A DNA stretch of 64,000 bases, taken from the NCBI RefSeq assembly GCF_006345805.1, contig NC_043014.1, forward strand, positions 46,066,001 through 46,130,000, given 5' to 3'. Origin of the DNA: Octopus sinensis. Lineage: Eukaryota. A program made the translations under genes and the position numbers. Positions 5,135 to 51,980 of this stretch are shown piece by piece (the stretch's first letter is position 1; each line of letters starts with the position of its first letter). Under the pieces are notes generated by a model that saw nothing but the letters and a program-made list of their open reading frames with translations, had not been told where the DNA came from and did not search any database.

Positions 5135-5740
5135 ACACGCACACACACACACATTCACACACTCATACACACACACTCATACACATACTCTCACTCTCAC
5201 ACACTCACACACACACAGACACACACACATTCACATAGGCACACAGACACACTCACAGACACACACACACACATTCACACACTCATACACACACACACTC
5301 ACACTCACACACACTCATACACACACACACTCACACTCACACGCACTCATACACACACATACTCACACACACACTCACAGACACAGACACACACATACAT
5401 TCACATACGCACACAGACACAGACACACACACAAACACACACGCACGCACACGCACGCACACACACGCACATTCACACACGCACATTCACACACTCACAC
5501 ACACATACACAAATTCACATACACTCACGCTCACACGCATACACACACACTCTCACACACACTCACACACACTCACATACACACACACTCACACACACAC
5601 ACTCACACACACACACACACACACACGGACTCACACACGGACATACTCACATTTACATACGCACACACTCACACACACACGGACACACACAAACACACAC
5701 ACACACACAAACACACACGCACATTCACACACGCACTCAT
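5135..5740. repeat. Degenerate (CA)n tract (others: 19075-19155; (TG)n at 27110-27225 and 28085-28520)
   Basis: Direct reading. Confidence 0.97.
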
Positions 5741-21862: not shown

Positions 21863-21962
21863 NNNNNNNNNNNNNNNNNNNNNNNNNNNNNNNNNNNNNN
21901 NNNNNNNNNNNNNNNNNNNNNNNNNNNNNNNNNNNNNNNNNNNNNNNNNNNNNNNNNNNNNN
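21863..21962. other. Assembly gap (100 N)
   Basis: Run of N. Confidence 1.
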
Positions 21963-45145: not shown

Positions 45146-45445
45146 AAGTAAAATAGTAATCAAAGGGTCCATAGATAATTTTAAAAAAACGTTGTTGTAG
45201 TTCTCACTATCATTGTCGTTGTTGTTGTTGTTGTTCTAGTTGTTGTAGTTGTTATTGTTTTTGTTGTTACTGTGCTCCAGGCCAGTTCCGATCGATCAGC
45301 AATCGCCCATATGTTCAAGACTGATTATTTCAGCTGTGACCATTTCCCCGATACATACATACATACATACACACACACATATATATATATATATATACGT
45401 TTAAATATTTGTTGTGCAAGATTTTATATATATATATATATATAT

Positions 45446-45628
45446 AACGCGTCTGTAGCTGCCGGTCAAGTAGTGTGGAGCGACTGACCTCCCTTGTTCG
45501 AAGGTTATATGGATACAGTTTGTGTATCAAATAGCTAACTTAAGGCGATGGCCTCATGGAGCTAATAAGCGGACAGCTTTATTCTTATTTTTATAAGAAT
45601 GCCATATTAGTATGGCGATAACTATTAT
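45446..45628 (+). repeat. 5' terminal direct repeat (183 bp), identical to 50980-51162
   Basis: Base-by-base comparison found no mismatch. It starts inside hammerhead stem III (aacgcgtc). Confidence 0.95.
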
Positions 45629-45827
45629 TTTTCGGGAACGCTGCCGTTGTTCTCTTTTAGAGAGACTTAGTAATTTTAATATTTCTATTATTGAAAACAG
45701 GTAGAAAATTTCTTTTTATATATGAACTTTAATTCAGTGTGGAATTAATTTTTATCTTGTCTCTTGTGACAAGTCATTGCATTTTAATATAGATCTTGAC
45801 TTAACATCAAATTCTGATTTTCCCGAG

Positions 45828-47272
45828 ATGGGAGAAGTTATAAATAATGGAAAGCAAAAGGATACAAAGGAGAAACAAAGTTTTTCGGAAGTGTTGGAGG
45901 CAATGTTATAGAACTGGAAGTAGCAATGGGGGATCTCTTCAAGTTCAGAAAGTTCATACAAAGGAATGGAGAAGAAACGAGAATAATACCGCCCCCTGAC
46001 ACCTTACAAGCAATCCGTGAGAAGACGGTAATTTATAAGGTATATAATATTAGGAAAAAAAGATTGCAGATGTAAAAAATGAATTGGTAGAACGGTGCAT
46101 GGCACCAATTGAACAAGGTTCGCTATGTTGGCCGAGGAGTGAGAAGCGCTACTATTGAAGCGCATTTCGAGTCGGCTAGCATAGCGAAGGAAATTTCAAC
46201 TCAAACGTTGAAGAGTGCAGACATCCTGTTGCTGCCCACGTACTTAGGGCGCAGAACAGCTAAAGTAACAATAGAGGATATACCAACAGGTTACGATGTA
46301 ATGTGGGCAGCAACAGCGGTCGTATTCGACGTAGAAGAGAAATTAAACATTTTAAACATGAGGATGAAAGAGGCAAAATTTTGGAAAGGTCAGCAGCTTG
46401 AAATGATCGTTCAAGCTGAAAATGCAACGCTGGAGAGTTTGCCAGACAGGGTCTTCGTGGGGGATGGACACACTATGCGGGTATCGGTGGAGAGACGTAG
46501 GCCCAGATGTTTCAAATGTGGGCAGAAGGGTCACGTCCGCTCAGAGTGCAAAAAGAAAAAACCCGTTAATGCCCCCATTCAAACCGCTGTGGAGAACAAA
46601 GCAGACATCACAGCAACAACAAAAGAGAATACCCGGAAAAAGCAAAATGAAAGTCAAAAGGAGGAAAAGAAAATGAATGGAAAACAAAACGAAAACGAAA
46701 ACGAGGTGGAAAATAATTTATCAAATGGAAAAGAACTGGAAGTGATGGAAATACGACTGTAACAACAAAAGGAAGAAATCCAATACCCCGGACTCCCCAC
46801 CCCAAACAAAAAGAAAAACAAACGCAGAAGAGCAACACAAAAAAATTATCCAATCCCACCCCGCTGGCACTACTTTTGTAGGCCAGCATTTCATTAAACC
46901 CCAGCCCCCAACTTTAAAAGGATTCAAAAAAACCGATAGGTGCATTGCTATAACACAAAAAACGAGAGAGTAGTTTGGTACATAAAGGCGAAACCAAACA
47001 TAAAATGTTTCAAATCATCGGAAAAAAACCCGGATTGGAGGTATGCGAAGGTTGGAGAGGAGGAATGGAAGGAGAGACTCTTCCAACTACACGTGAGGGA
47101 CAACCTGATTAAAGATGTCACACAAGAGGTGATAGCTGGAAAATTGAATATTAGCCCGGCAGCCACTCCATCCCAGAGCCCGGTGGCAACGCCGGTTAAA
47201 TGCCCAGCAACAACGGAGAGTGTGGGGGAGGCAGGCAGACAAAAGCTGCCATGCTCCCTCTCACAACCGTAA
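45828..47272 (+). pseudogene. ORF1 (gag-like, zinc knuckle) of the Tx1-like LINE, frameshifted
   Basis: ATG at 45828 (MGEVINNGKQ...). ORF 46109-46762 contains CFKCGQKGHVRSEC (CX2CX4HX4C). LLPTYLGRRTAKVTI resembles the ORF1 at 16623-17250. Broken into several frames. Confidence 0.8.
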
Positions 47273-47296
47273 GTAAAAAACTTTCTTCATTCATCG

Positions 47297-50200
47297 ATGA
47301 TTAAGTTGGGCTGTATAAATGGCGTGGAATGGGGTCGAAATGGAAACAGGCTTGCTTGCTGGACGACCTCAGGACACACAGAATAGATGTAGCCATTGTC
47401 ACCGAGTCCAAGATGAGAGGAACCCAAGCGTTCTCGCATCTTCTCAATGGTTACGAGAAATTTATTTCTCCTAGCCGAGGAGGAAGTGCAGGCGTGGCAG
47501 TCCTTATCAAGAAGAACTTGGACTTACAGGTAAGTACTGTCTTTATGGACCCAGAAGGTAGGCTGGTTGTCCTCGATGTAACTCACGTGAGTAAGCAGTC
47601 CTTCAGGTTGGTAGCTGTTTATGCTCCTAATGAGGGTAGGCAGACTGGTTTTTATCGGAACTTGGAGCACTTTCTAGTGACGTCTAAAACGGTAGTATTG
47701 GTAGGGGATTTCAACACTATCATCGATGCGCGGATAGATAGTGTGGGCTCGTCTGATAGAAGGGGGAATCCTTGCCTCAAGGGTCTACTGACGAGCCTTA
47801 ATCTAGTAGATCGGTTTCGAATGGATGAGCCGAGCATTCCACAGTGGACGTGGAGTAACAATGACGGCTCACGCAGATCGTATATAGATAGGGTATTTGT
47901 TAAAGAACGAGATAGGAATAGCATTAGCTGTCCACAATTTTGTATTGTGCCTTACACGGATCACAAATTAGTGACGTGTGAGGTACATGTAGATAAATGC
48001 CATAGACAGGGACCCGGATACTGGAAAATGAACAAGTCTATTTTGGCTTGTGAAGCTTTCCGTAACCGGATTATGGAATTAGTCCAGAGGGCATTATGTG
48101 GAACCATCATTAATAATAGATGGTGGATCGCCCTCAAAAGAGCCATCCGTTTCGAGTCCATTAGATTTAGCAACCAGCTAAGTTTAGATAGGACTAGAAT
48201 AGAGGGCGATTTAGTTAAGACTTAGACGAGGCATGGGATCTGGCTGTGCATCTAGAGTGTTAGCAGAGAGAACGATCTTGTACCGTCACCTCAATGCCAA
48301 GCATGAAGGATGTAGAGTCAGAGCTAAGCTACGTGCAATGAAACGAGAAGGTATTAATGTTGCCGGATGGGCACGTCGTGTGGAGAGTCAGAAGGGCAAA
48401 AAGTCCTCTATTAAGTCTTTAACTGACGAACATGGACGCAAAATCTATGGACAGGAGGAGATACAGAAGGTCTTTCAACAGCATTTCGCTCGGTTGTTTG
48501 GGGAGGGCGATCCACTCGAGCGAGGGGAGGACTTACAGAACTTCCTAGCTGGTGGGCATCGGCTCTCGCCACGCAGAGCGGAACGCTGTGAAGGACCGAT
48601 TACTCCCGCGGAGGTAAGAGGGGTTTTGGCTGAATGCGCCCGGGAAAAGTCGCCGGGACTGGATGGTCTGCCCTATGAGTTTTATTGTTGTATGCCGGAC
48701 TTGTTCGGGGACATACTGGCAAGCGTCTACGCAAACTGGCAACAGAATGGGAAGATTCCCAGTTCTGTGAGCCGGGGAGTTGTGACGCTGATCCAGAAAG
48801 ACCCGAGCAAGGGGGATAATATTAGTAATTATAGGCCCATAACTCTACTTAATGTAGAGTTAAAGATTTTGGCCAAGGTGTTAGCAGAAAGGTTGAAGGT
48901 CGTCATGGAAAAACTTGTCGGAAAGGCACAGACATGTGCAATCCCAGGAAGGTCGATCGAAGATAATCTTCACCTTCTACGCTACACTATAGACAGGGTT
49001 GGGCAATTAGCCGGCAAAGGAGGGGCATTGGTCCATTTAGACCAAAGTAAAGCATTTGATAGGGTAGATCATCAGTACCTGGCGACGGTTCTCGAAGCGG
49101 CTGGGCTAGGTCCTGACTTTCGCGGGTGGATATCAGCTATGTACAGCGGTATCAAGTCCACAGTCCAGATAAACGGTTACTTAACGGAACTGTTTTCGAT
49201 TAAGCGTTCAGTTCGTCAAGGATGTCCCTTGTCCCCTCTCCTGTACGTTTTGGCTCTTGAGCCATTGCTGCGGAGTTGGAGACGGTGAGATGCAATCCTA
49301 ATGAATCGGATGCGGTAAGTCTGTTTCTGCGTATGCGGATGACGTCACCTTCACGTGTCCAACGAAGCACAACTAACTCGTGTAGAAGGTGCTCTCCGAA
49401 GATACGAAGCGGTGGCTGGGGCAAAAGTTAACAAGGACAAGTCCACTGGTTTGCGCCTCGGCACCTGGAGGAACAAGCCGATATCGTCCAGTGTTGTTGG
49501 ACACTGGACATATGGTCCTGTTAAATTGCTTGGAGTTTGGTTTGGTTCAGACTCCCAGACGGAGAAAATTGGAGCGAGGTAGTGACCAAGGTAGAAGCCA
49601 TAGTTCGGGAGTGGTCCGGAAGGCATCTTTCCTTGAAAGGGAGGGCGGAGGTGGTACAGGTGTTTATAGCATCTGTAATCACCTATCGCCTGACTGTCGT
49701 GCCTTGCCCCGATTTGTGGCTAAGCAAGTTGGATCGACTCCTTTTCCGCTTTTTGTGGAAGGGAGGAAAGCCACTTGTAAGGCGCTCCGTGTGTTGCCAG
49801 GAACCACTAAAGGGTGGCTGGGGATGCCTTGGTTAATGATGCGCAGGCATGCGCTGAGACTGAGACATCTCTGGTTTCACCTGGAAGGTGATAAGGTGTG
49901 GAGTCCGCTGGCAGATAATTTCTTCCCGCAACCGGACTCTATGGAGAGATTTAAACCCGGTTTCATTAAAAGACGGAATCTGACTTTATGGCAGAAAGAG
50001 TGCCGACAGGCACTCTGGCTGATCCACAAGATAGGCAAAGCCGGCTGCGGGAATACCACCTCGACATTTTATAGAAGGATGGTAGAGGCAAAAAATGACG
50101 ACATCCTAAGAGGGGCTCTAGGGTTCGATGAGGATCAACTATACGACCTGTTTAAGAAGACTTTCAAGCCGGGGTATTTGGACAATTACCAAAAATCCCT

Positions 50201-50687
50201 GACTTGGCAGTGCTATAGGAATGCTCTACCTGTTCGCGATAAGTTATATAGGCATGGAATGTCAATGCCACCGACATGTCCAAGATGTGGGTTGGACGAT
50301 GAAACCGTCCAGCACGCTTTTGTACATTGTCAGGAGCTGTCAGGCTTAATAAGTTACGTAGAACACGCGTTGTCGCATCTGGGACGAGTACAGCTATCGG
50401 CTGGTTCTATAATAAAGATGATACCGCCAGCTGGACTCTCAAAGGAAGGTGAGGCTTGTTTTCACTGTACGGTGGCAGTACTGAAAGAGTGTGTGTGGAG
50501 AACTAGATTGGAAGGTTTGGTGTCAGGATCCTTTGTCTCTGGATATGGTATGTTAAAATACTTCAGATACCATCTAAAGAGCAAGATGGATTTAGAGAAG
50601 AGGAACCTGACACAGAAAAAGTATGTGAATCGATGGAAGGATGTGATAAAAAAGGTGGGTGTGAGTAACCCTTCTTGGTCATCATGA
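47297..50687 (+). pseudogene. ORF2 (AP endonuclease, reverse transcriptase, C-terminal Cys/His finger) of the Tx1-like LINE, several frameshifts
   Basis: APE motifs: IDVAIVTESK, LVAVYAPN, VLVGDFN, SYIDRV, YTDHKLV. RT motifs: KSPGLDGLPYEFY, NYRPITLLN, LDQSKAFDRVDH, SVRQGCPLSP, and YADD at 49332-49343. C-terminal CPRCGLDDETVQHAFVHC. Frame changes near 47322, 48225, 49290, 49580 and 49836. Confidence 0.93.
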
Positions 50688-50951
50688 AGGGAGAAAATAG
50701 TCTCTGGGCTCTTAGGCTGTCGGGTAAGAATCCTGACTGTGATATACCTAGCTGGCCAAAATCATTTTTAATTTAAAAACAAAAAGGAGAAAAGTAAAGT
50801 CTAGTATCATAATCAATAATCAACATATGTAAATATCAAACGAACAACGTAAACTTTTTGTAATTATGTTTTGTATTGTAATGTACTATCTCTGTAAGAT
50901 TTTTATAATCATAATAAAGATTTTAGAAGCGACACCTACTGGTCTGGCTAC

Positions 50952-50993
50952 GCTGCATTGAAAAGGGGCAATACCCCGAAACGCGTCTGTAGC
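50952..50993 (+). ncRNA. Minimal type I hammerhead ribozyme, U3:A8 core variant
   Basis: gctgca | TTGAAAA | gggg caata cccc | GAAA | cgcg | TC | tgtagc. Stem I is 6 bp with one G-U, stem II is 4 bp, stem III is palindromic. Predicted cleavage after 50987. Confidence 0.75.
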
Positions 50994-51162
50994 TGCCGGT
51001 CAAGTAGTGTGGAGCGACTGACCTCCCTTGTTCGAAGGTTATATGGATACAGTTTGTGTATCAAATAGCTAACTTAAGGCGATGGCCTCATGGAGCTAAT
51101 AAGCGGACAGCTTTATTCTTATTTTTATAAGAATGCCATATTAGTATGGCGATAACTATTAT
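50980..51162 (+). repeat. 3' terminal direct repeat (183 bp)
   Basis: Identical to 45446-45628 and followed by (TA)n. Confidence 0.95.
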
Positions 51163-51201
51163 ATATATATATATATATATATATAGGTGCAGATATATAT
51201 A

Positions 51202-51407
51202 GGTCATCAGCCCACGTCGATCACGTCCCTGCTCTTTGTACAGACCGCCCGTCGCTACTACCGATCGAACGGTCCGGTGAGGTCCTCGGATCTGGCCGAC
51301 GAGACCGCTTACGCGCGGCAGCGTTCCGCGCCGTCGTCGGCGCGTTCTCTGATGGCCCGGAGAAGACGACCGAATCCGATCGCTTAGAGGAAGTAAAAGT
51401 CGTAACA
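51202..51407 (+). pseudogene. 18S rRNA 3' fragment (helix 44 region), orphan rDNA piece
   Basis: Matches universal SSU motifs GTCCCTGC(C)CTTTGTACA(C)ACCGCCCGTCGCTACTACCGAT and TAGAGGAAGTAAAAGTCGTAACA. No flanking rDNA, and it stops before helix 45. Confidence 0.9.
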
Positions 51408-51723
51408 TTTAATGCGAAAAATGACCAAAAAAGGAGCAAACACAACATATTTAGCAGCGAAAACGTTAAATTAGGAAAAGACAAACCGTTCTTCAGTTCA
51501 TGGATACGATACGAAAAGCGTAATTTCGAAAACGAAATTTTGTAATGCACTCTCGGATTTTGTGAAATAAATTGCAATTTTCGCCAAATAAAATCGCAGA
51601 GATATGTGTCGACTATGGAAGGATAAGTGTCACAACGCCGTTTATTAATTGGCTTTACAGAGGGTGTTTTCTACTTGTTCCATGTGGGTACAATCTTTCA
51701 AGTTAATAAATCCAACGTTGTGT

Positions 51724-51980
51724 GGAGGCGCAATGGCCCAGTGGTTAGGGCAGTGGACTCGCGTTTGGAGGATCGCGGTTTCGATTCCCAGACCGGACGT
51801 TGTGTGTGTTTATTGAGCGAAAACACCTAAAGCTCCACGAGGCTCCGGCAGGGGGTGGGTGGCGACCCCTGTTGTACTCTTTCGCCCCAACTTTCTCTCG
51901 CTCTCTCTTCCTGTTTCTTGAGTAACGCTGCGATGGACTGGCGTCCCGTCCAGCTGGGGGGGGGGAACACATACCCATGG
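51724..51980 (+). mobile_element. SINE family C (head-only copy at 10790-10929, minus strand)
   Basis: ggaggcgcaatggcccagtggttag, gtttcgattccc, gatggactggcgtcccgtccag. Confidence 0.85.

What the first reader, a model, noticed from the sequence alone, without database searches (positions are those of the whole stretch)
45446..51162. L1/Tx1-type LINE with Penelope-like terminal direct repeats overlapping a hammerhead ribozyme
Seen: an APE-RT LINE (CCHC ORF1, no GIY-YIG) lies between two identical 183-bp direct repeats, with (TA)n on both outer sides. The 3' repeat starts within a complete hammerhead fold (50952-50993). The 5' repeat starts at the equivalent point, about 8 nt upstream of the predicted cleavage site. 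Established: minimal hammerheads with a palindromic stem III in partial terminal repeats are the hallmark of Penelope-like elements and retrozymes, whereas ribozymes described in LINEs (R2, L1Tc and others) are 5' HDV-like. Inference, two models. (A) The ribozyme and repeat belong to the LINE, which is cut out of read-through or multimeric RNA, possibly circularised (monomer 5534 nt), and copied slightly more than once around. (B) A Tx1-like, target-specific LINE inserted into a roughly 270-nt retrozyme/pLTR; ttttaga at 45655-45661 and 50921-50927 could be its TSD. I know of no description of either arrangement for this group, but I cannot search the literature.
Basis: partly seen in the sequence, partly recalled or inferred. 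Interest (0 to 1): 0.9.

Follow-up and report, generated by a model that had tools for sequence, protein, structure and literature searches.

The report
Tx1-like LINE nested in hammerhead retrozyme
The "terminal repeats with a hammerhead" do not belong to the LINE: a Tx1/L1-type LINE sits, flanked by a 15-bp target duplication, inside a 1.5-unit copy of a 362-nt hammerhead-bearing, retrozyme-like tandem element that inserts into (TA)n microsatellites.

Summary
There are two identical 183-nt repeats (45446-45628 and 50980-51162), (TA)n on both outer sides, an APE-RT LINE with a CCHC ORF1, and a minimal hammerhead at 50952-50993. The hammerhead core carries U3-A8, a covariation already reported for Penelope-element hammerheads.

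The repeats and the ribozyme belong to a separate 362-nt non-coding element with at least about 700 candidate copies. Its copies are permuted partial tandems of 0.2 to about 4 units. They end at one of two CTATTA sites inside (TA)n. In 86% of cases they lie head-to-head with an inverted partner.

The 5.36-kb LINE proper occupies one fixed site in that unit, between two copies of AAGCGACACCTACTG. LINE-free units have one copy of this 15-mer. The window copy has lost the 5' copy through a ~192-bp deletion. Older solo copies of the LINE lack the repeat and lie next to U1 snRNA 5' ends or ATA-rich sites, one with a 10-bp TSD.

Co-mobilisation of the composite (model A) is disfavoured but not excluded. 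The mobiliser of the host element is unknown; a PLE is my inference. This is a new variant of known kinds.

The parts
45425..45445 (.). (TA)n microsatellite, left flank of the insertion
   Evidence: Read directly. 50 of 59 3' flanks of family members are TA microsatellite.
45446..45628 (+). 5' copy of the 183-nt repeat. It is positions ~54-236 of the 362-nt host (retrozyme-like) unit. It starts 8 nt upstream of the hammerhead cleavage-equivalent site 45453|45454.
   Evidence: It is 100% identical to at least 40 other genomic copies.
45629..45699 (+). Host-unit segment following the repeat. It contains the second alternative 3'-end site, CTATTA, at 45685-45690.
45699..45702 (+). Junction of a ~192-bp deletion private to this copy. 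Missing are ~50 nt of host unit, the 5' copy of the 15-bp duplication, and the first ~127 nt of the LINE 5'UTR.
   Evidence: Other copies carry the extra ~190 nt. In the window the LINE aligns only from LINE position 128.
45702..50926 (+). LINE proper (5'-deleted). It ends ...AATAAA (50913-50918) GATTTTAG (50919-50926).
46091..46762 (+). ORF1 remnant with a CCHC zinc knuckle (~46505-46555). The intact ORF1 in other copies is ~512 aa.
47305..48225 (+). ORF2 part 1: apurinic/apyrimidinic-type endonuclease.
   Evidence: Pfam PF03372, E=4e-15.
48215..49288 (+). ORF2 part 2: reverse transcriptase, N-terminal part (different frame).
   Evidence: Pfam PF00078; frames.
49386..50687 (+). ORF2 part 3: RT C-terminal part and zf-RVT (third frame).
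   Evidence: Pfam PF13966; frames.
50927..50941 (+). AAGCGACACCTACTG: the 3' copy of the 15-bp target-site duplication, which is positions 1-15 of the host unit.
   Evidence: identical junctions in ~30 copies; a single copy in LINE-free units.
50952..50993 (+). Minimal type I hammerhead motif (U3-A8 core, palindromic loop-less stem III). Predicted cleavage at 50987|50988.
   Evidence: The U3-A8 variant is documented in PMC4209133.
50980..51162 (+). 3' copy of the 183-nt repeat. It ends at the first CTATTA 3'-end site (51156-51161).
51159..51185 (.). (TA)n microsatellite, right flank.

Best explanation
Two different retroelements are nested here.

(1) The host. It is a 362-nt non-coding element of the metazoan 'non-LTR retrozyme' / Penelope-pLTR type. 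It carries one minimal hammerhead per unit.
- Copies are seamless, circularly permuted partial tandems, as if reverse-transcribed from multimeric or circular RNA.
- Reverse transcription starts at either of two internal CUAUUA sites annealed to a nicked (TA)n target.
- Usually both DNA ends of the break are primed. This gives two copies that meet head-to-head.
- The window holds a 1.5-unit copy. Its two overlapping parts are the '183-bp terminal repeats'.

(2) The guest. It is a 5.36-kb Tx1/L1-type LINE (CCHC ORF1; APE-RT-zfRVT ORF2).
- It inserted by ordinary target-primed reverse transcription into one specific site of the host unit, 10 nt upstream of hammerhead stem I. This duplicated AAGCGACACCTACTG.
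- This site is a recurrent target of the young LINE subfamily, in the way Tx1L uses Tx1D. Older relatives used U1 snRNA 5' ends or ATA-rich sites.

Shown: the anatomy, the empty sites, the fixed junctions, and the solo copies with a TSD.

Inferred: recurrent site-specific insertion rather than amplification of one composite; a multimeric or circular RNA template; and that the host is mobilised by another enzyme, most likely a PLE.

Also inferred: read-through LINE RNA would carry the 15-mer, which is useful for annealing to the nicked target. It would also carry the downstream hammerhead, which could trim its 3' end.
For: Host element
- There are at least 759 candidate copies of the repeat; all 40 scored are 100% identical.
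- LINE-free units have period 362, in arrays of up to ~4 units.
- Of 59 distinct 3' ends, 29 lie at site 1 and 25 at site 2, both CTATTA. 50 of 59 flanks are (TA)n.
- 70 of 81 5' ends lie in 35 head-to-head pairs.
- The circular unit folds to -118.9 kcal/mol against -83.9 +/- 5.4 for shuffles (z=-6.5). The dimer forms stem III.
- The hammerhead motif is unique in the window and absent from 20 Mb of random sequence.
- There is no sequence similarity between the host unit and the LINE.

Nested insertion
- The 15-mer flanks the LINE in all ~30 full-length copies with invariant junctions. LINE-free units have it once.
- A unique 78-nt 5'-truncated LINE remnant sits at the same site with only 8 nt of the 15-mer upstream.
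- LINE-15mer-LINE arrays (period ~5377) occur at two loci.
- The LINE occurs in host units of at least 3 subtypes, interleaved on the LINE tree.
- Most LINE-bearing arrays also contain empty sites.
- About 31 of 34 repeat-associated LINE 3' ends belong to full-length copies. None is truncated inside the LINE next to (TA)n or next to an inverted partner.
- Private substitutions run about 3-fold denser in the flanking host sequence than in the LINE. This is weak evidence.

LINE autonomy
- Solo copies lack the repeat. One has a 10-11-bp TSD and is 5'-truncated. One lies at a (TA)n edge. One is directly followed by U1 snRNA (Rfam 80.8 bits).

Precedent
- Tx1-clade families target other transposons, snRNA genes and microsatellites (PMC4494074).
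- Site-specific LINEs occasionally insert in tandem (PMC4640811).
Against: - The older solo copies show a different target (|ATAC/ATAT, U1 5' end). The 15-mer site does not resemble it. Recurrent targeting therefore requires a specificity change between subfamilies only ~3-9% apart.
- Fully occupied LINE arrays of period 5723-5725 (4+1 copies on C3; also C10122 and C13093) contrast with many completely empty arrays. This fits co-amplification or local duplication better than independent hits.
- The marker 3 nt upstream of the 15-mer (cag/cgg) and the 3' junction variant (TTTTAG/TTTAGG) co-segregate with LINE lineage.
- Only one truncated insertion at the site was found. Two further candidates abut assembly gaps.
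- No PLE sharing sequence with the host unit was found. One abundant family was sampled and is unrelated.
- ORF1 shows no detectable purifying selection among copies.
- Hammerhead cleavage is untested.
Confidence: 0.58

Rival explanations
1. Composite co-mobilisation. A single ancestral off-target insertion put the LINE into a retrozyme unit. Since then the whole LINE-plus-retrozyme unit (5724 nt) has been copied from read-through, multimeric or circular RNA by the LINE's own RT. Copying starts at the retrozyme's CTATTA sites in (TA)n.
For: - Junctions are invariant in ~30 copies.
- Solo copies of the LINE use ATA-rich or (TA)n-edge targets, compatible with (TA)n.
- Tandem LINE arrays of period 5723-5725 have every site filled.
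- Junction-proximal markers are linked to LINE lineage.
- The repeat-associated LINE subfamily is far more numerous than the solo one: 34 versus 6 of the 40 scored 3' ends.
Against: - No composite copy ends inside the 5.4-kb LINE, although 5' ends are spread over the 362-nt units. Random truncation or joining should mostly fall inside the LINE.
- Upstream of most LINE copies lie LINE-free units, not a LINE 3'UTR.
- The 78-nt remnant has its breakpoint inside the 15-mer.
- Two of two examined solo LINE insertions have no inverted partner, against 86% for the host element.
Confidence: 0.22
2. LINE-driven retrozyme. The 362-nt hammerhead element is a non-autonomous partner mobilised in trans by this LINE family (ATA/(TA)n-cutting endonuclease), not by a PLE. 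The nesting reflects a LINE/retrozyme partnership.
For: - The target type is shared: solo LINE 3' junctions are followed by ATAC/ATAT, and one lies at a (TA)n edge.
- The RNA 3' ends are similar in kind: ...GAUUUU versus ...CUAUU, each followed by AUA.
- Both families look recently active.
- They are physically linked.
- Cervera & de la Pena 2020 left 'LINEs or PLEs' open as mobilisers (PMC7229834).
Against: - There is no shared 3' tail or any other sequence similarity.
- Solo LINE insertions look like ordinary TPRT products (TSD, 5' truncation, no inverted partner), unlike the host element.
- The hammerhead type (min-HHR, U3-A8), the tandem-plus-inverted architecture and the (TA)n bias are the published hallmarks of PLEs (PMC4209133, PMC8557442).
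- PLEs are very abundant here: 4846 GIY-YIG candidates.
Confidence: 0.12
3. DNA-level spread. The LINE was copied from filled into empty host units by ectopic gene conversion or unequal crossing-over, using the ~300-nt homologous flanks, rather than by new retrotransposition.
For: - Copies are always full length and junctions are invariant.
- Near-junction markers are co-converted while distal markers are reshuffled.
- Some arrays are fully occupied.
Against: - It would need more than 30 inter-chromosomal conversions of a 5.4-kb heterology in a short time.
- The unique 78-nt truncated remnant with a shortened duplication looks like TPRT.
- The LINE makes TSD-flanked insertions elsewhere.
Confidence: 0.05
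4. The 183-bp duplication is an assembly artefact, or a chance one-off.
For: - The assembly has gaps next to some copies.
- It has many homopolymer indels.
Against: The same partial-tandem architecture recurs at dozens of independent loci with different flanks.
Confidence: 0.01

Closest known systems
Tx1L in Tx1D (Xenopus), Tx1-Mar in Mariner-N4_AMi (crocodilians), and other target-specific Tx1-clade LINEs (Keno/U2, Kibi, Koshi)
   Same: An APE-RT LINE with a CCHC ORF1 found almost exclusively at one position of another repetitive element, giving composite units. Relatives target snRNA genes or microsatellites (PMC4494074).
   Different: The target here is a hammerhead-bearing retrozyme-like retroelement, not a DNA transposon. 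The TSD is 15 bp. Older relatives abut the U1 snRNA 5' end. As of 2015, the only element reported to target U1 snRNA genes was the DNA transposon Dada-U1 (PMC4640811). Clade membership by RT phylogeny was not tested.
Metazoan non-LTR retrozymes (Cervera & de la Pena 2020, PMC7229834; Li, Clavereau & Pollet 2026 preprint)
   Same: A non-coding unit of 170-400 nt with one type I hammerhead, in tandem genomic copies. The RNA is predicted to be highly self-paired. A circular or multimeric template is suggested by permuted copies.
   Different: The hammerhead is the minimal, loop-less stem III type with a U3-A8 core, not the canonical type of invertebrate retrozymes. Copies are short (mostly under 4 units), sit in (TA)n, and are mostly in inverted pairs. 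circRNA is not shown. A fraction of units carries a complete LINE.
Penelope-like elements and their pLTRs with min-HHRs (Cervera & de la Pena 2014, PMC4209133; Craig et al. 2021, PMC8557442)
   Same: Partial tandem 'pseudo-LTR', an adjacent inverted 5'-truncated copy, (TA)n insertion bias, a minimal dimer-type hammerhead including the U3-A8 covariation, and hammerhead pairs on opposite strands 100-700 bp apart.
   Different: The coding element between the repeats has APE + L1-type RT, not a telomerase-like RT + GIY-YIG. No PLE ORF was found linked to this unit.
5' HDV-like ribozymes of R2, L1Tc, RTE and similar LINEs
   Same: A self-cleaving ribozyme physically associated with a LINE transcript.
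   Different: A different ribozyme class. Here the ribozyme belongs to the target element and lies downstream of the LINE 3' end (and upstream only through the preceding host unit). It is not part of the LINE 5'UTR.

Membership tests
Hammerhead ribozyme (type I, minimal PLE-type) | Conserved catalytic core (C3 U4 G5 A6 N7 G8 A9 ... G12 A13 A14, A15.1-U16.1, H17) | tested here: met
   11 of 13 positions are canonical. C3/G8 are replaced by U3/A8, which keeps the 3-8 Watson-Crick pair. This natural covariation is reported for Schistosoma PLE min-HHRs. Sequence read.
Hammerhead ribozyme (type I, minimal PLE-type) | Helices I and II, plus a palindromic helix III that allows an active dimer | tested here: met
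   Stem I has 6 bp and stem II has 4 bp with a 5-nt loop. ACGCGU pairs between two copies in cofold. The descriptor gives 1 hit in the window and 0 in 20 Mb of random sequence.
Hammerhead ribozyme (type I, minimal PLE-type) | Match to curated covariance models (Rfam hammerhead families) | tested here: not met
   No hammerhead hit at E<=10. I recall that the Rfam models expect a closed stem III and a canonical core, which this motif lacks; the models were not inspected here.
Hammerhead ribozyme (type I, minimal PLE-type) | Self-cleavage at H17 | not testable with these tools
   5' ends of DNA copies at unit positions 58-63 are only weakly enriched: 4 observed versus 1.3 expected, P=0.05.
Hammerhead ribozyme (type I, minimal PLE-type) | Covariation in stems among diverged members | tested here: inconclusive
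   The 73 instances are nearly identical. Variants are single C>T changes giving G-U pairs.
Metazoan non-LTR retrozyme | Non-coding tandem unit of ~170-400 nt with one type I HHR per unit | tested here: met
   362-nt unit, arrays of up to ~4 units, one motif per unit.
Metazoan non-LTR retrozyme | Expressed as self-paired circular RNA | not testable with these tools
   Only the fold was tested: circular MFE z=-6.5. Permuted copies with two internal start sites fit a circular or multimeric template.
Penelope-like element | Telomerase-like RT with GIY-YIG endonuclease | tested here: not met
   ORF2 has Exo_endo_phos + RVT_1 + zf-RVT. The best PDB match is L1 ORF2p.
Penelope-like element | pLTR partial tandem, inverted 5'-truncated neighbour, HHR in the repeat | tested here: met
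   (86% inverted pairs). This applies to the 362-nt host element, not to the LINE.
Tx1 / L1-type LINE | APE endonuclease + RT (+ zf-RVT) in ORF2, and an ORF1 with a CCHC knuckle | tested here: met
Tx1 / L1-type LINE | TPRT signature: TSD and 5' truncation | tested here: met
   A solo copy has a 10-11-bp TSD and is truncated to 1.3 kb. A 15-bp duplication flanks the nested copies.
Tx1 / L1-type LINE | Placement in the Tx1 clade by RT phylogeny | not tested
   No labelled reference set was available. The only support is that homologues at ~30% identity are named 'Transposon TX1' by their sources.
Tx1 / L1-type LINE | Sequence-specific target | tested here: inconclusive
   34 of 40 scored 3' ends are at the same 15-mer site. 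However, a single origin followed by co-amplification is not excluded. Solo copies use U1 or ATA-rich sites.

The most novel reading that the evidence does not exclude
The LINE and the hammerhead element form a functional partnership. The LINE's APE/RT would mobilise the 362-nt retrozyme and the 5.7-kb composite from hammerhead-processed, possibly circular RNA. That would make this the first 'autonomous retrozyme', and would show that an APE-type LINE, not only a PLE, can drive metazoan retrozymes and produce PLE-like tandem/inverted insertions at a palindromic (TA)n target.
Probability: 0.15. Interest if true: 0.85.

Novelty: new variant of a known kind. Interest (0 to 1): 0.5.

Why it matters
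- It separates two elements that look like one and corrects the idea of a LINE with Penelope-like LTRs.
- It adds a hammerhead retrozyme to the list of 'safe-haven' targets used by Tx1-type LINEs.
- It gives a well-resolved example of a minimal-hammerhead retrozyme family in a large invertebrate genome. Two defined reverse-transcription start sites and 86% head-to-head double insertions constrain models of how retrozymes and PLE-like elements integrate.
- The physical linkage of a complete, recently active LINE with a retrozyme makes the open question 'who mobilises animal retrozymes?' directly testable in this species.

Tried and rejected
- Rfam, at gathering and at E<=10, finds no hammerhead. 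It finds only an 18S fragment and microsatellite pseudo-miRNA hits.
The other copies show a 15-mer duplication instead.
- Distant LINE relatives (40-45% identity) from ENA contigs: one is a tandem array (period 6484), but no hammerhead-like motif was seen in their 3' regions.
- The LINE tree against host-unit subtype is star-like and only partly sorted, so it is not decisive.
- N/S counts on ORF1 give shared variants 23N:8S and singletons 65N:25S, so there is no signal.
- ORF intactness is unreliable because of abundant private 1-nt homopolymer deletions.
- Host unit against LINE proper: no similarity, so the unit is not a deletion derivative made of LINE sequence.
- Search for a PLE partner: flanking ORFs in 60 loci show none. 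One abundant PLE family downstream of a GIY-YIG hit is unrelated.
- Two candidate 5'-truncated nested copies turned out to abut 100-N assembly gaps.
No full census was therefore possible.
- A U1-like motif in the 15-mer region was compared by eye. The register of the nicks differs, so I treated the resemblance as coincidental.
Full report
OBSERVATION

The window holds an exact 183-nt direct repeat at 45446-45628 and 50980-51162. (TA)n lies on both outer sides. Between the repeats lies a LINE. ORF1 has a CCHC knuckle. ORF2 has an APE endonuclease, an RT and zf-RVT, and no GIY-YIG. Its closest solved structure is human LINE-1 ORF2p, E=5e-63. Its closest named homologues, at ~30% identity, are called 'Transposon TX1'.

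ORF2 is broken into three frames in the window. All family members carry many private 1-nt deletions in short homopolymers: 122 private indels in 52 kb. These frameshifts may therefore be assembly errors.

THE HAMMERHEAD

Rfam finds no hammerhead, even at E<=10. A descriptor for the minimal Penelope-type hammerhead hits exactly 50952-50993 and nothing else in the window. It hits nothing in 20 Mb of random sequence of the same dinucleotide make-up.

- The core is UUGAAAA...GAAA, with U3 and A8 in place of C3 and G8.
- This keeps the 3-8 base pair. It is a natural covariation already described for PLE min-HHRs of Schistosoma (PMC4209133).
- Stem III is the loop-less palindrome ACGCGU. Two copies pair through it in a cofold.
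- Predicted cleavage is C50987|U50988.
- Cleavage itself is untested. Such minimal motifs cleave poorly in vitro.

WHOSE REPEATS ARE THEY?

The 183-nt sequence has at least 759 candidate copies in the 2.7-Gb genome, and the 40 scored are all identical. Almost none of them flanks a LINE. They belong to a 362-nt non-coding unit.

I number the unit from the A of AAGCGACACC (window 50927). The hammerhead then cleaves after position 60, and the 183-nt repeat is positions 54-236. Copies are seamless, circularly permuted pieces of a tandem, from 0.2 to about 4 units long.

- Of 59 distinct 3' ends, 29 lie at position ~236 and 25 at ~298. Both sites read CTATTA|TT. 50 of 59 flanks are (TA)n.
- Of 81 distinct 5' ends, 70 sit in 35 head-to-head pairs. 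In these, two oppositely oriented copies, each with its own 3' end in the (TA)n, meet with a few bases of overlap.
- 5' ends are otherwise spread over the unit. There is a hot spot at positions 17-25 (9 against 2.0 expected, P=2e-4). Enrichment at the cleavage site is only weak (4 against 1.3).
- The circular 362-nt RNA is predicted to be much more structured than shuffles (z=-6.5).

This matches a metazoan non-LTR retrozyme (PMC7229834). It also matches the structural hallmarks listed for PLE insertions: partial tandem pLTR, an inverted 5'-truncated neighbour, (TA)n bias, and a hammerhead in the repeat (PMC8557442).

HOW THE LINE RELATES TO IT

Other LINE copies carry ~190 nt more 5'UTR than the window copy. 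They show the full arrangement:

...GATTGTCRG-AAGCGACACCTACTG-[ATTTTTCC...ORF1...ORF2...AATAAAGATTT(T)AG(G)]-AAGCGACACCTACTG-G(T)CTGGCTACGC-hammerhead...

The 5.36-kb LINE proper is therefore flanked by a 15-bp direct duplication. LINE-free units have the 15-mer once. That is the picture of a filled and an empty site.

The window copy has lost ~50 nt of host unit, the 5' 15-mer and 127 nt of LINE 5'UTR in a private deletion at 45699-45702. The host unit and the LINE share no other sequence.

THE LINE CAN LIVE WITHOUT THE REPEAT

A 62-nt probe of the LINE 3' terminus finds only 62 candidates genome-wide. Of the 40 scored, 34 are followed by the 15-mer and 6 are not. The solo copies are more diverged. 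They end ...GATTTT and are followed by one of the following:

- ATACTTACCTGGCA..., which is U1 snRNA from its first base (Rfam 80.8 bits);
- ATACTTATAC, with the same 10-11 bp also at the 5' flank of a copy truncated to 1.3 kb, which makes it a TSD;
- ATACTTtg, ATACAG or ATACAT;
- (TA)n(TG)n, for a copy truncated to 2 kb with unique sequence at its 5' side.

One old full-length copy is preceded by U1 nt 1-17. The LINE is thus an ordinary, autonomous, TSD-making element whose older lineage preferred |ATA(C/T), including the U1 5' end.

NESTED TARGET OR CO-MOBILISED COMPOSITE?

- the TSD-like duplication and the abundant empty sites;
- a unique 78-nt LINE remnant at the same site, with only AAGCGACA upstream, which is what a 5'-truncated TPRT event looks like;
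- LINE-15mer-LINE arrays at two loci, which look like re-insertion into the regenerated target, a behaviour known for Utopia;
- LINEs in host units of at least three subtypes, interleaved on the LINE tree;
- empty sites in the same arrays;
- a ~3-fold excess of private substitutions in the host flank over the LINE, which is weak evidence;
- above all, about 31 of 34 repeat-associated LINE 3' ends belong to full-length copies. None is truncated inside the 5.4-kb LINE next to (TA)n or next to an inverted partner. Yet the host 5' ends are scattered over a few hundred bases. If LINE and host were copied together, most end points should fall inside the LINE.

For co-mobilisation (model A):

- the 15-mer does not resemble the solo copies' target;
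- arrays of period 5723-5725 have every site filled, next to many arrays with none filled;
- junction-proximal variants track LINE lineage.

I weigh this as about 0.6 for nesting by target-specific insertion and about 0.2 for co-mobilisation. The remainder goes to a LINE-retrozyme partnership or to DNA-level spread.

WHO MOVES THE HOST ELEMENT?

This is not shown. The hammerhead type, the tandem-plus-inverted architecture and the (TA)n bias point to a PLE. PLEs are very abundant here, with 4846 GIY-YIG candidates. However, the one family I could sample is unrelated, and no PLE ORF lies next to any of the 60 loci read.

The two solo LINE insertions examined have no inverted partner. This argues, on n=2, against the LINE enzymes producing the host's architecture. 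The palindromic (TA)n target could itself explain double priming, so this question stays open.

A POSSIBLE BENEFIT TO THE LINE (INFERENCE ONLY)

A transcript reading through the weak AATAAA would carry the 15-mer directly after the LINE 3' end. That is the sequence complementary to the nicked target, as used by other site-specific LINEs. The transcript would also carry the hammerhead 61 nt downstream, which could define its 3' end. Transcripts starting in an upstream unit would be trimmed by that unit's hammerhead.

COMPARISON AND NOVELTY

Tx1-clade LINEs are known to target other transposons, snRNA genes and microsatellites (PMC4494074). Minimal hammerheads, retrozymes and pLTR-like architectures are also known. 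I found no description of a Tx1/L1-type LINE associated with a hammerhead, or of one targeting a retrozyme. As of 2015, the only element reported to target U1 snRNA genes was the DNA transposon Dada-U1.

The finding is therefore a new variant of known kinds, not a LINE with its own hammerhead LTRs.

LIMITS

There is no RNA or biochemical evidence. Clade assignment rests on domains and on names given by sources, not on a tree.

Noticed in passing
window 51210-51407 (+): A fragment of the 3' end of 18S rRNA lies directly right of the (TA)n. Rfam SSU_rRNA_eukarya gives 74 bits over model positions 1671-1796 of 1831. It stops at GTCGTAACA and is followed by unrelated AT-rich sequence. No ITS or 5.8S follows, so it is an orphan rDNA piece, possibly a retro-copied or target-derived fragment.
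   Followed up: partly
L080 (G000:C15:29053130-29053270); L077/L078 (G000:C6502:254400-254800 and 259780-259980): Older solo copies of the same LINE abut U1 snRNA. One 3' end is followed by U1 from nt 1 (Rfam 80.8 bits). One full-length copy is preceded by U1 nt 1-17. All six solo 3' junctions are followed by ATAC or ATAT. This is a lead for a U1-5'-end-targeting Tx1-like LINE. In the 2015 literature read here, only Dada-U1 (a DNA transposon) is listed for U1.
   Followed up: partly
35 loci, e.g. L007 1148-1746, L018, L019, L020: 86% of 5' ends of the 362-nt element (70 of 81) lie in head-to-head inverted pairs. Overlap at the junction is about -5 to +6 nt, and each partner has its own 3' end in the (TA)n. 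This suggests that both ends of the break in the palindromic target prime reverse transcription.
   Followed up: yes
host-unit positions 17-25 (window equivalent ~50943-50952): There is a hot spot of 5' ends just upstream of hammerhead stem I: 9 observed against 2.0 expected, P=2e-4. Almost no ends fall in the 43 nt beyond it. This could be an RNA 5' end (transcription start or processing site) or a strong RT stop. It is unexplained.
   Followed up: partly
L061 3253-3443 (G000:C4:112245800-112254300); also short hits in L020, L029, L035, L037: A ~190-nt insert interrupts the APE domain of one LINE copy. Parts of the same sequence occur at other, unrelated loci. It is probably a small SINE- or MITE-like repeat.
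   Followed up: no
L064/L065 (ENA ERZ25071366 ctg14421c, 15.9 kb): A distant relative of the LINE (40% identity in ORF2) from another organism is also arranged as a head-to-tail tandem array with a period of 6484 nt. A simple pattern scan found no hammerhead-like motif in the ~830-nt spacer.
   Followed up: partly
whole genome; L083 (G000:C6:12733500-12734500): Penelope-like elements are extremely abundant: 4846 GIY-YIG candidates, many with identical scores and 781-aa open frames. The sampled family has a C-terminal GIY-YIG. Downstream it carries ~100-nt repeats with ...TGATGACGTC...CGAAAC... motifs that may be its own hammerheads.
   Followed up: no
window ~51716-51800 (+): A tRNA-like stretch (GGCGCAATGGCCCAGTGGTTAGGGC...GGTTTCGATTCCC) looks like the head of a tRNA-derived SINE. 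ARAGORN calls no tRNA there.
   Followed up: partly
window 21863-21962; also G000:C27:4504371-4504470 and C2:174527318-174527417: Runs of 100 N (assembly gaps or withheld stretches) occur in the window. They also lie directly upstream of two LINE 3' fragments. Repeat copies next to gaps can be mistaken for truncated elements.
   Followed up: yes
all LINE copies, e.g. L031-L060: Private single-base deletions in short homopolymers are about as frequent as private substitutions, at ~2.3 per kb. Only 4 of 25 copies keep ORF1 open, although their substitution divergence is very low. This looks like long-read assembly error rather than decay.
   Followed up: partly
G000:C27:4504700-4504900 (L082+L109): One nested copy ends abnormally. 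The host unit stops at position ~140 and is followed by a short inverted piece of itself (foldback) and then (TA)n. This is a different junction type from the usual head-to-head pairs.
   Followed up: no
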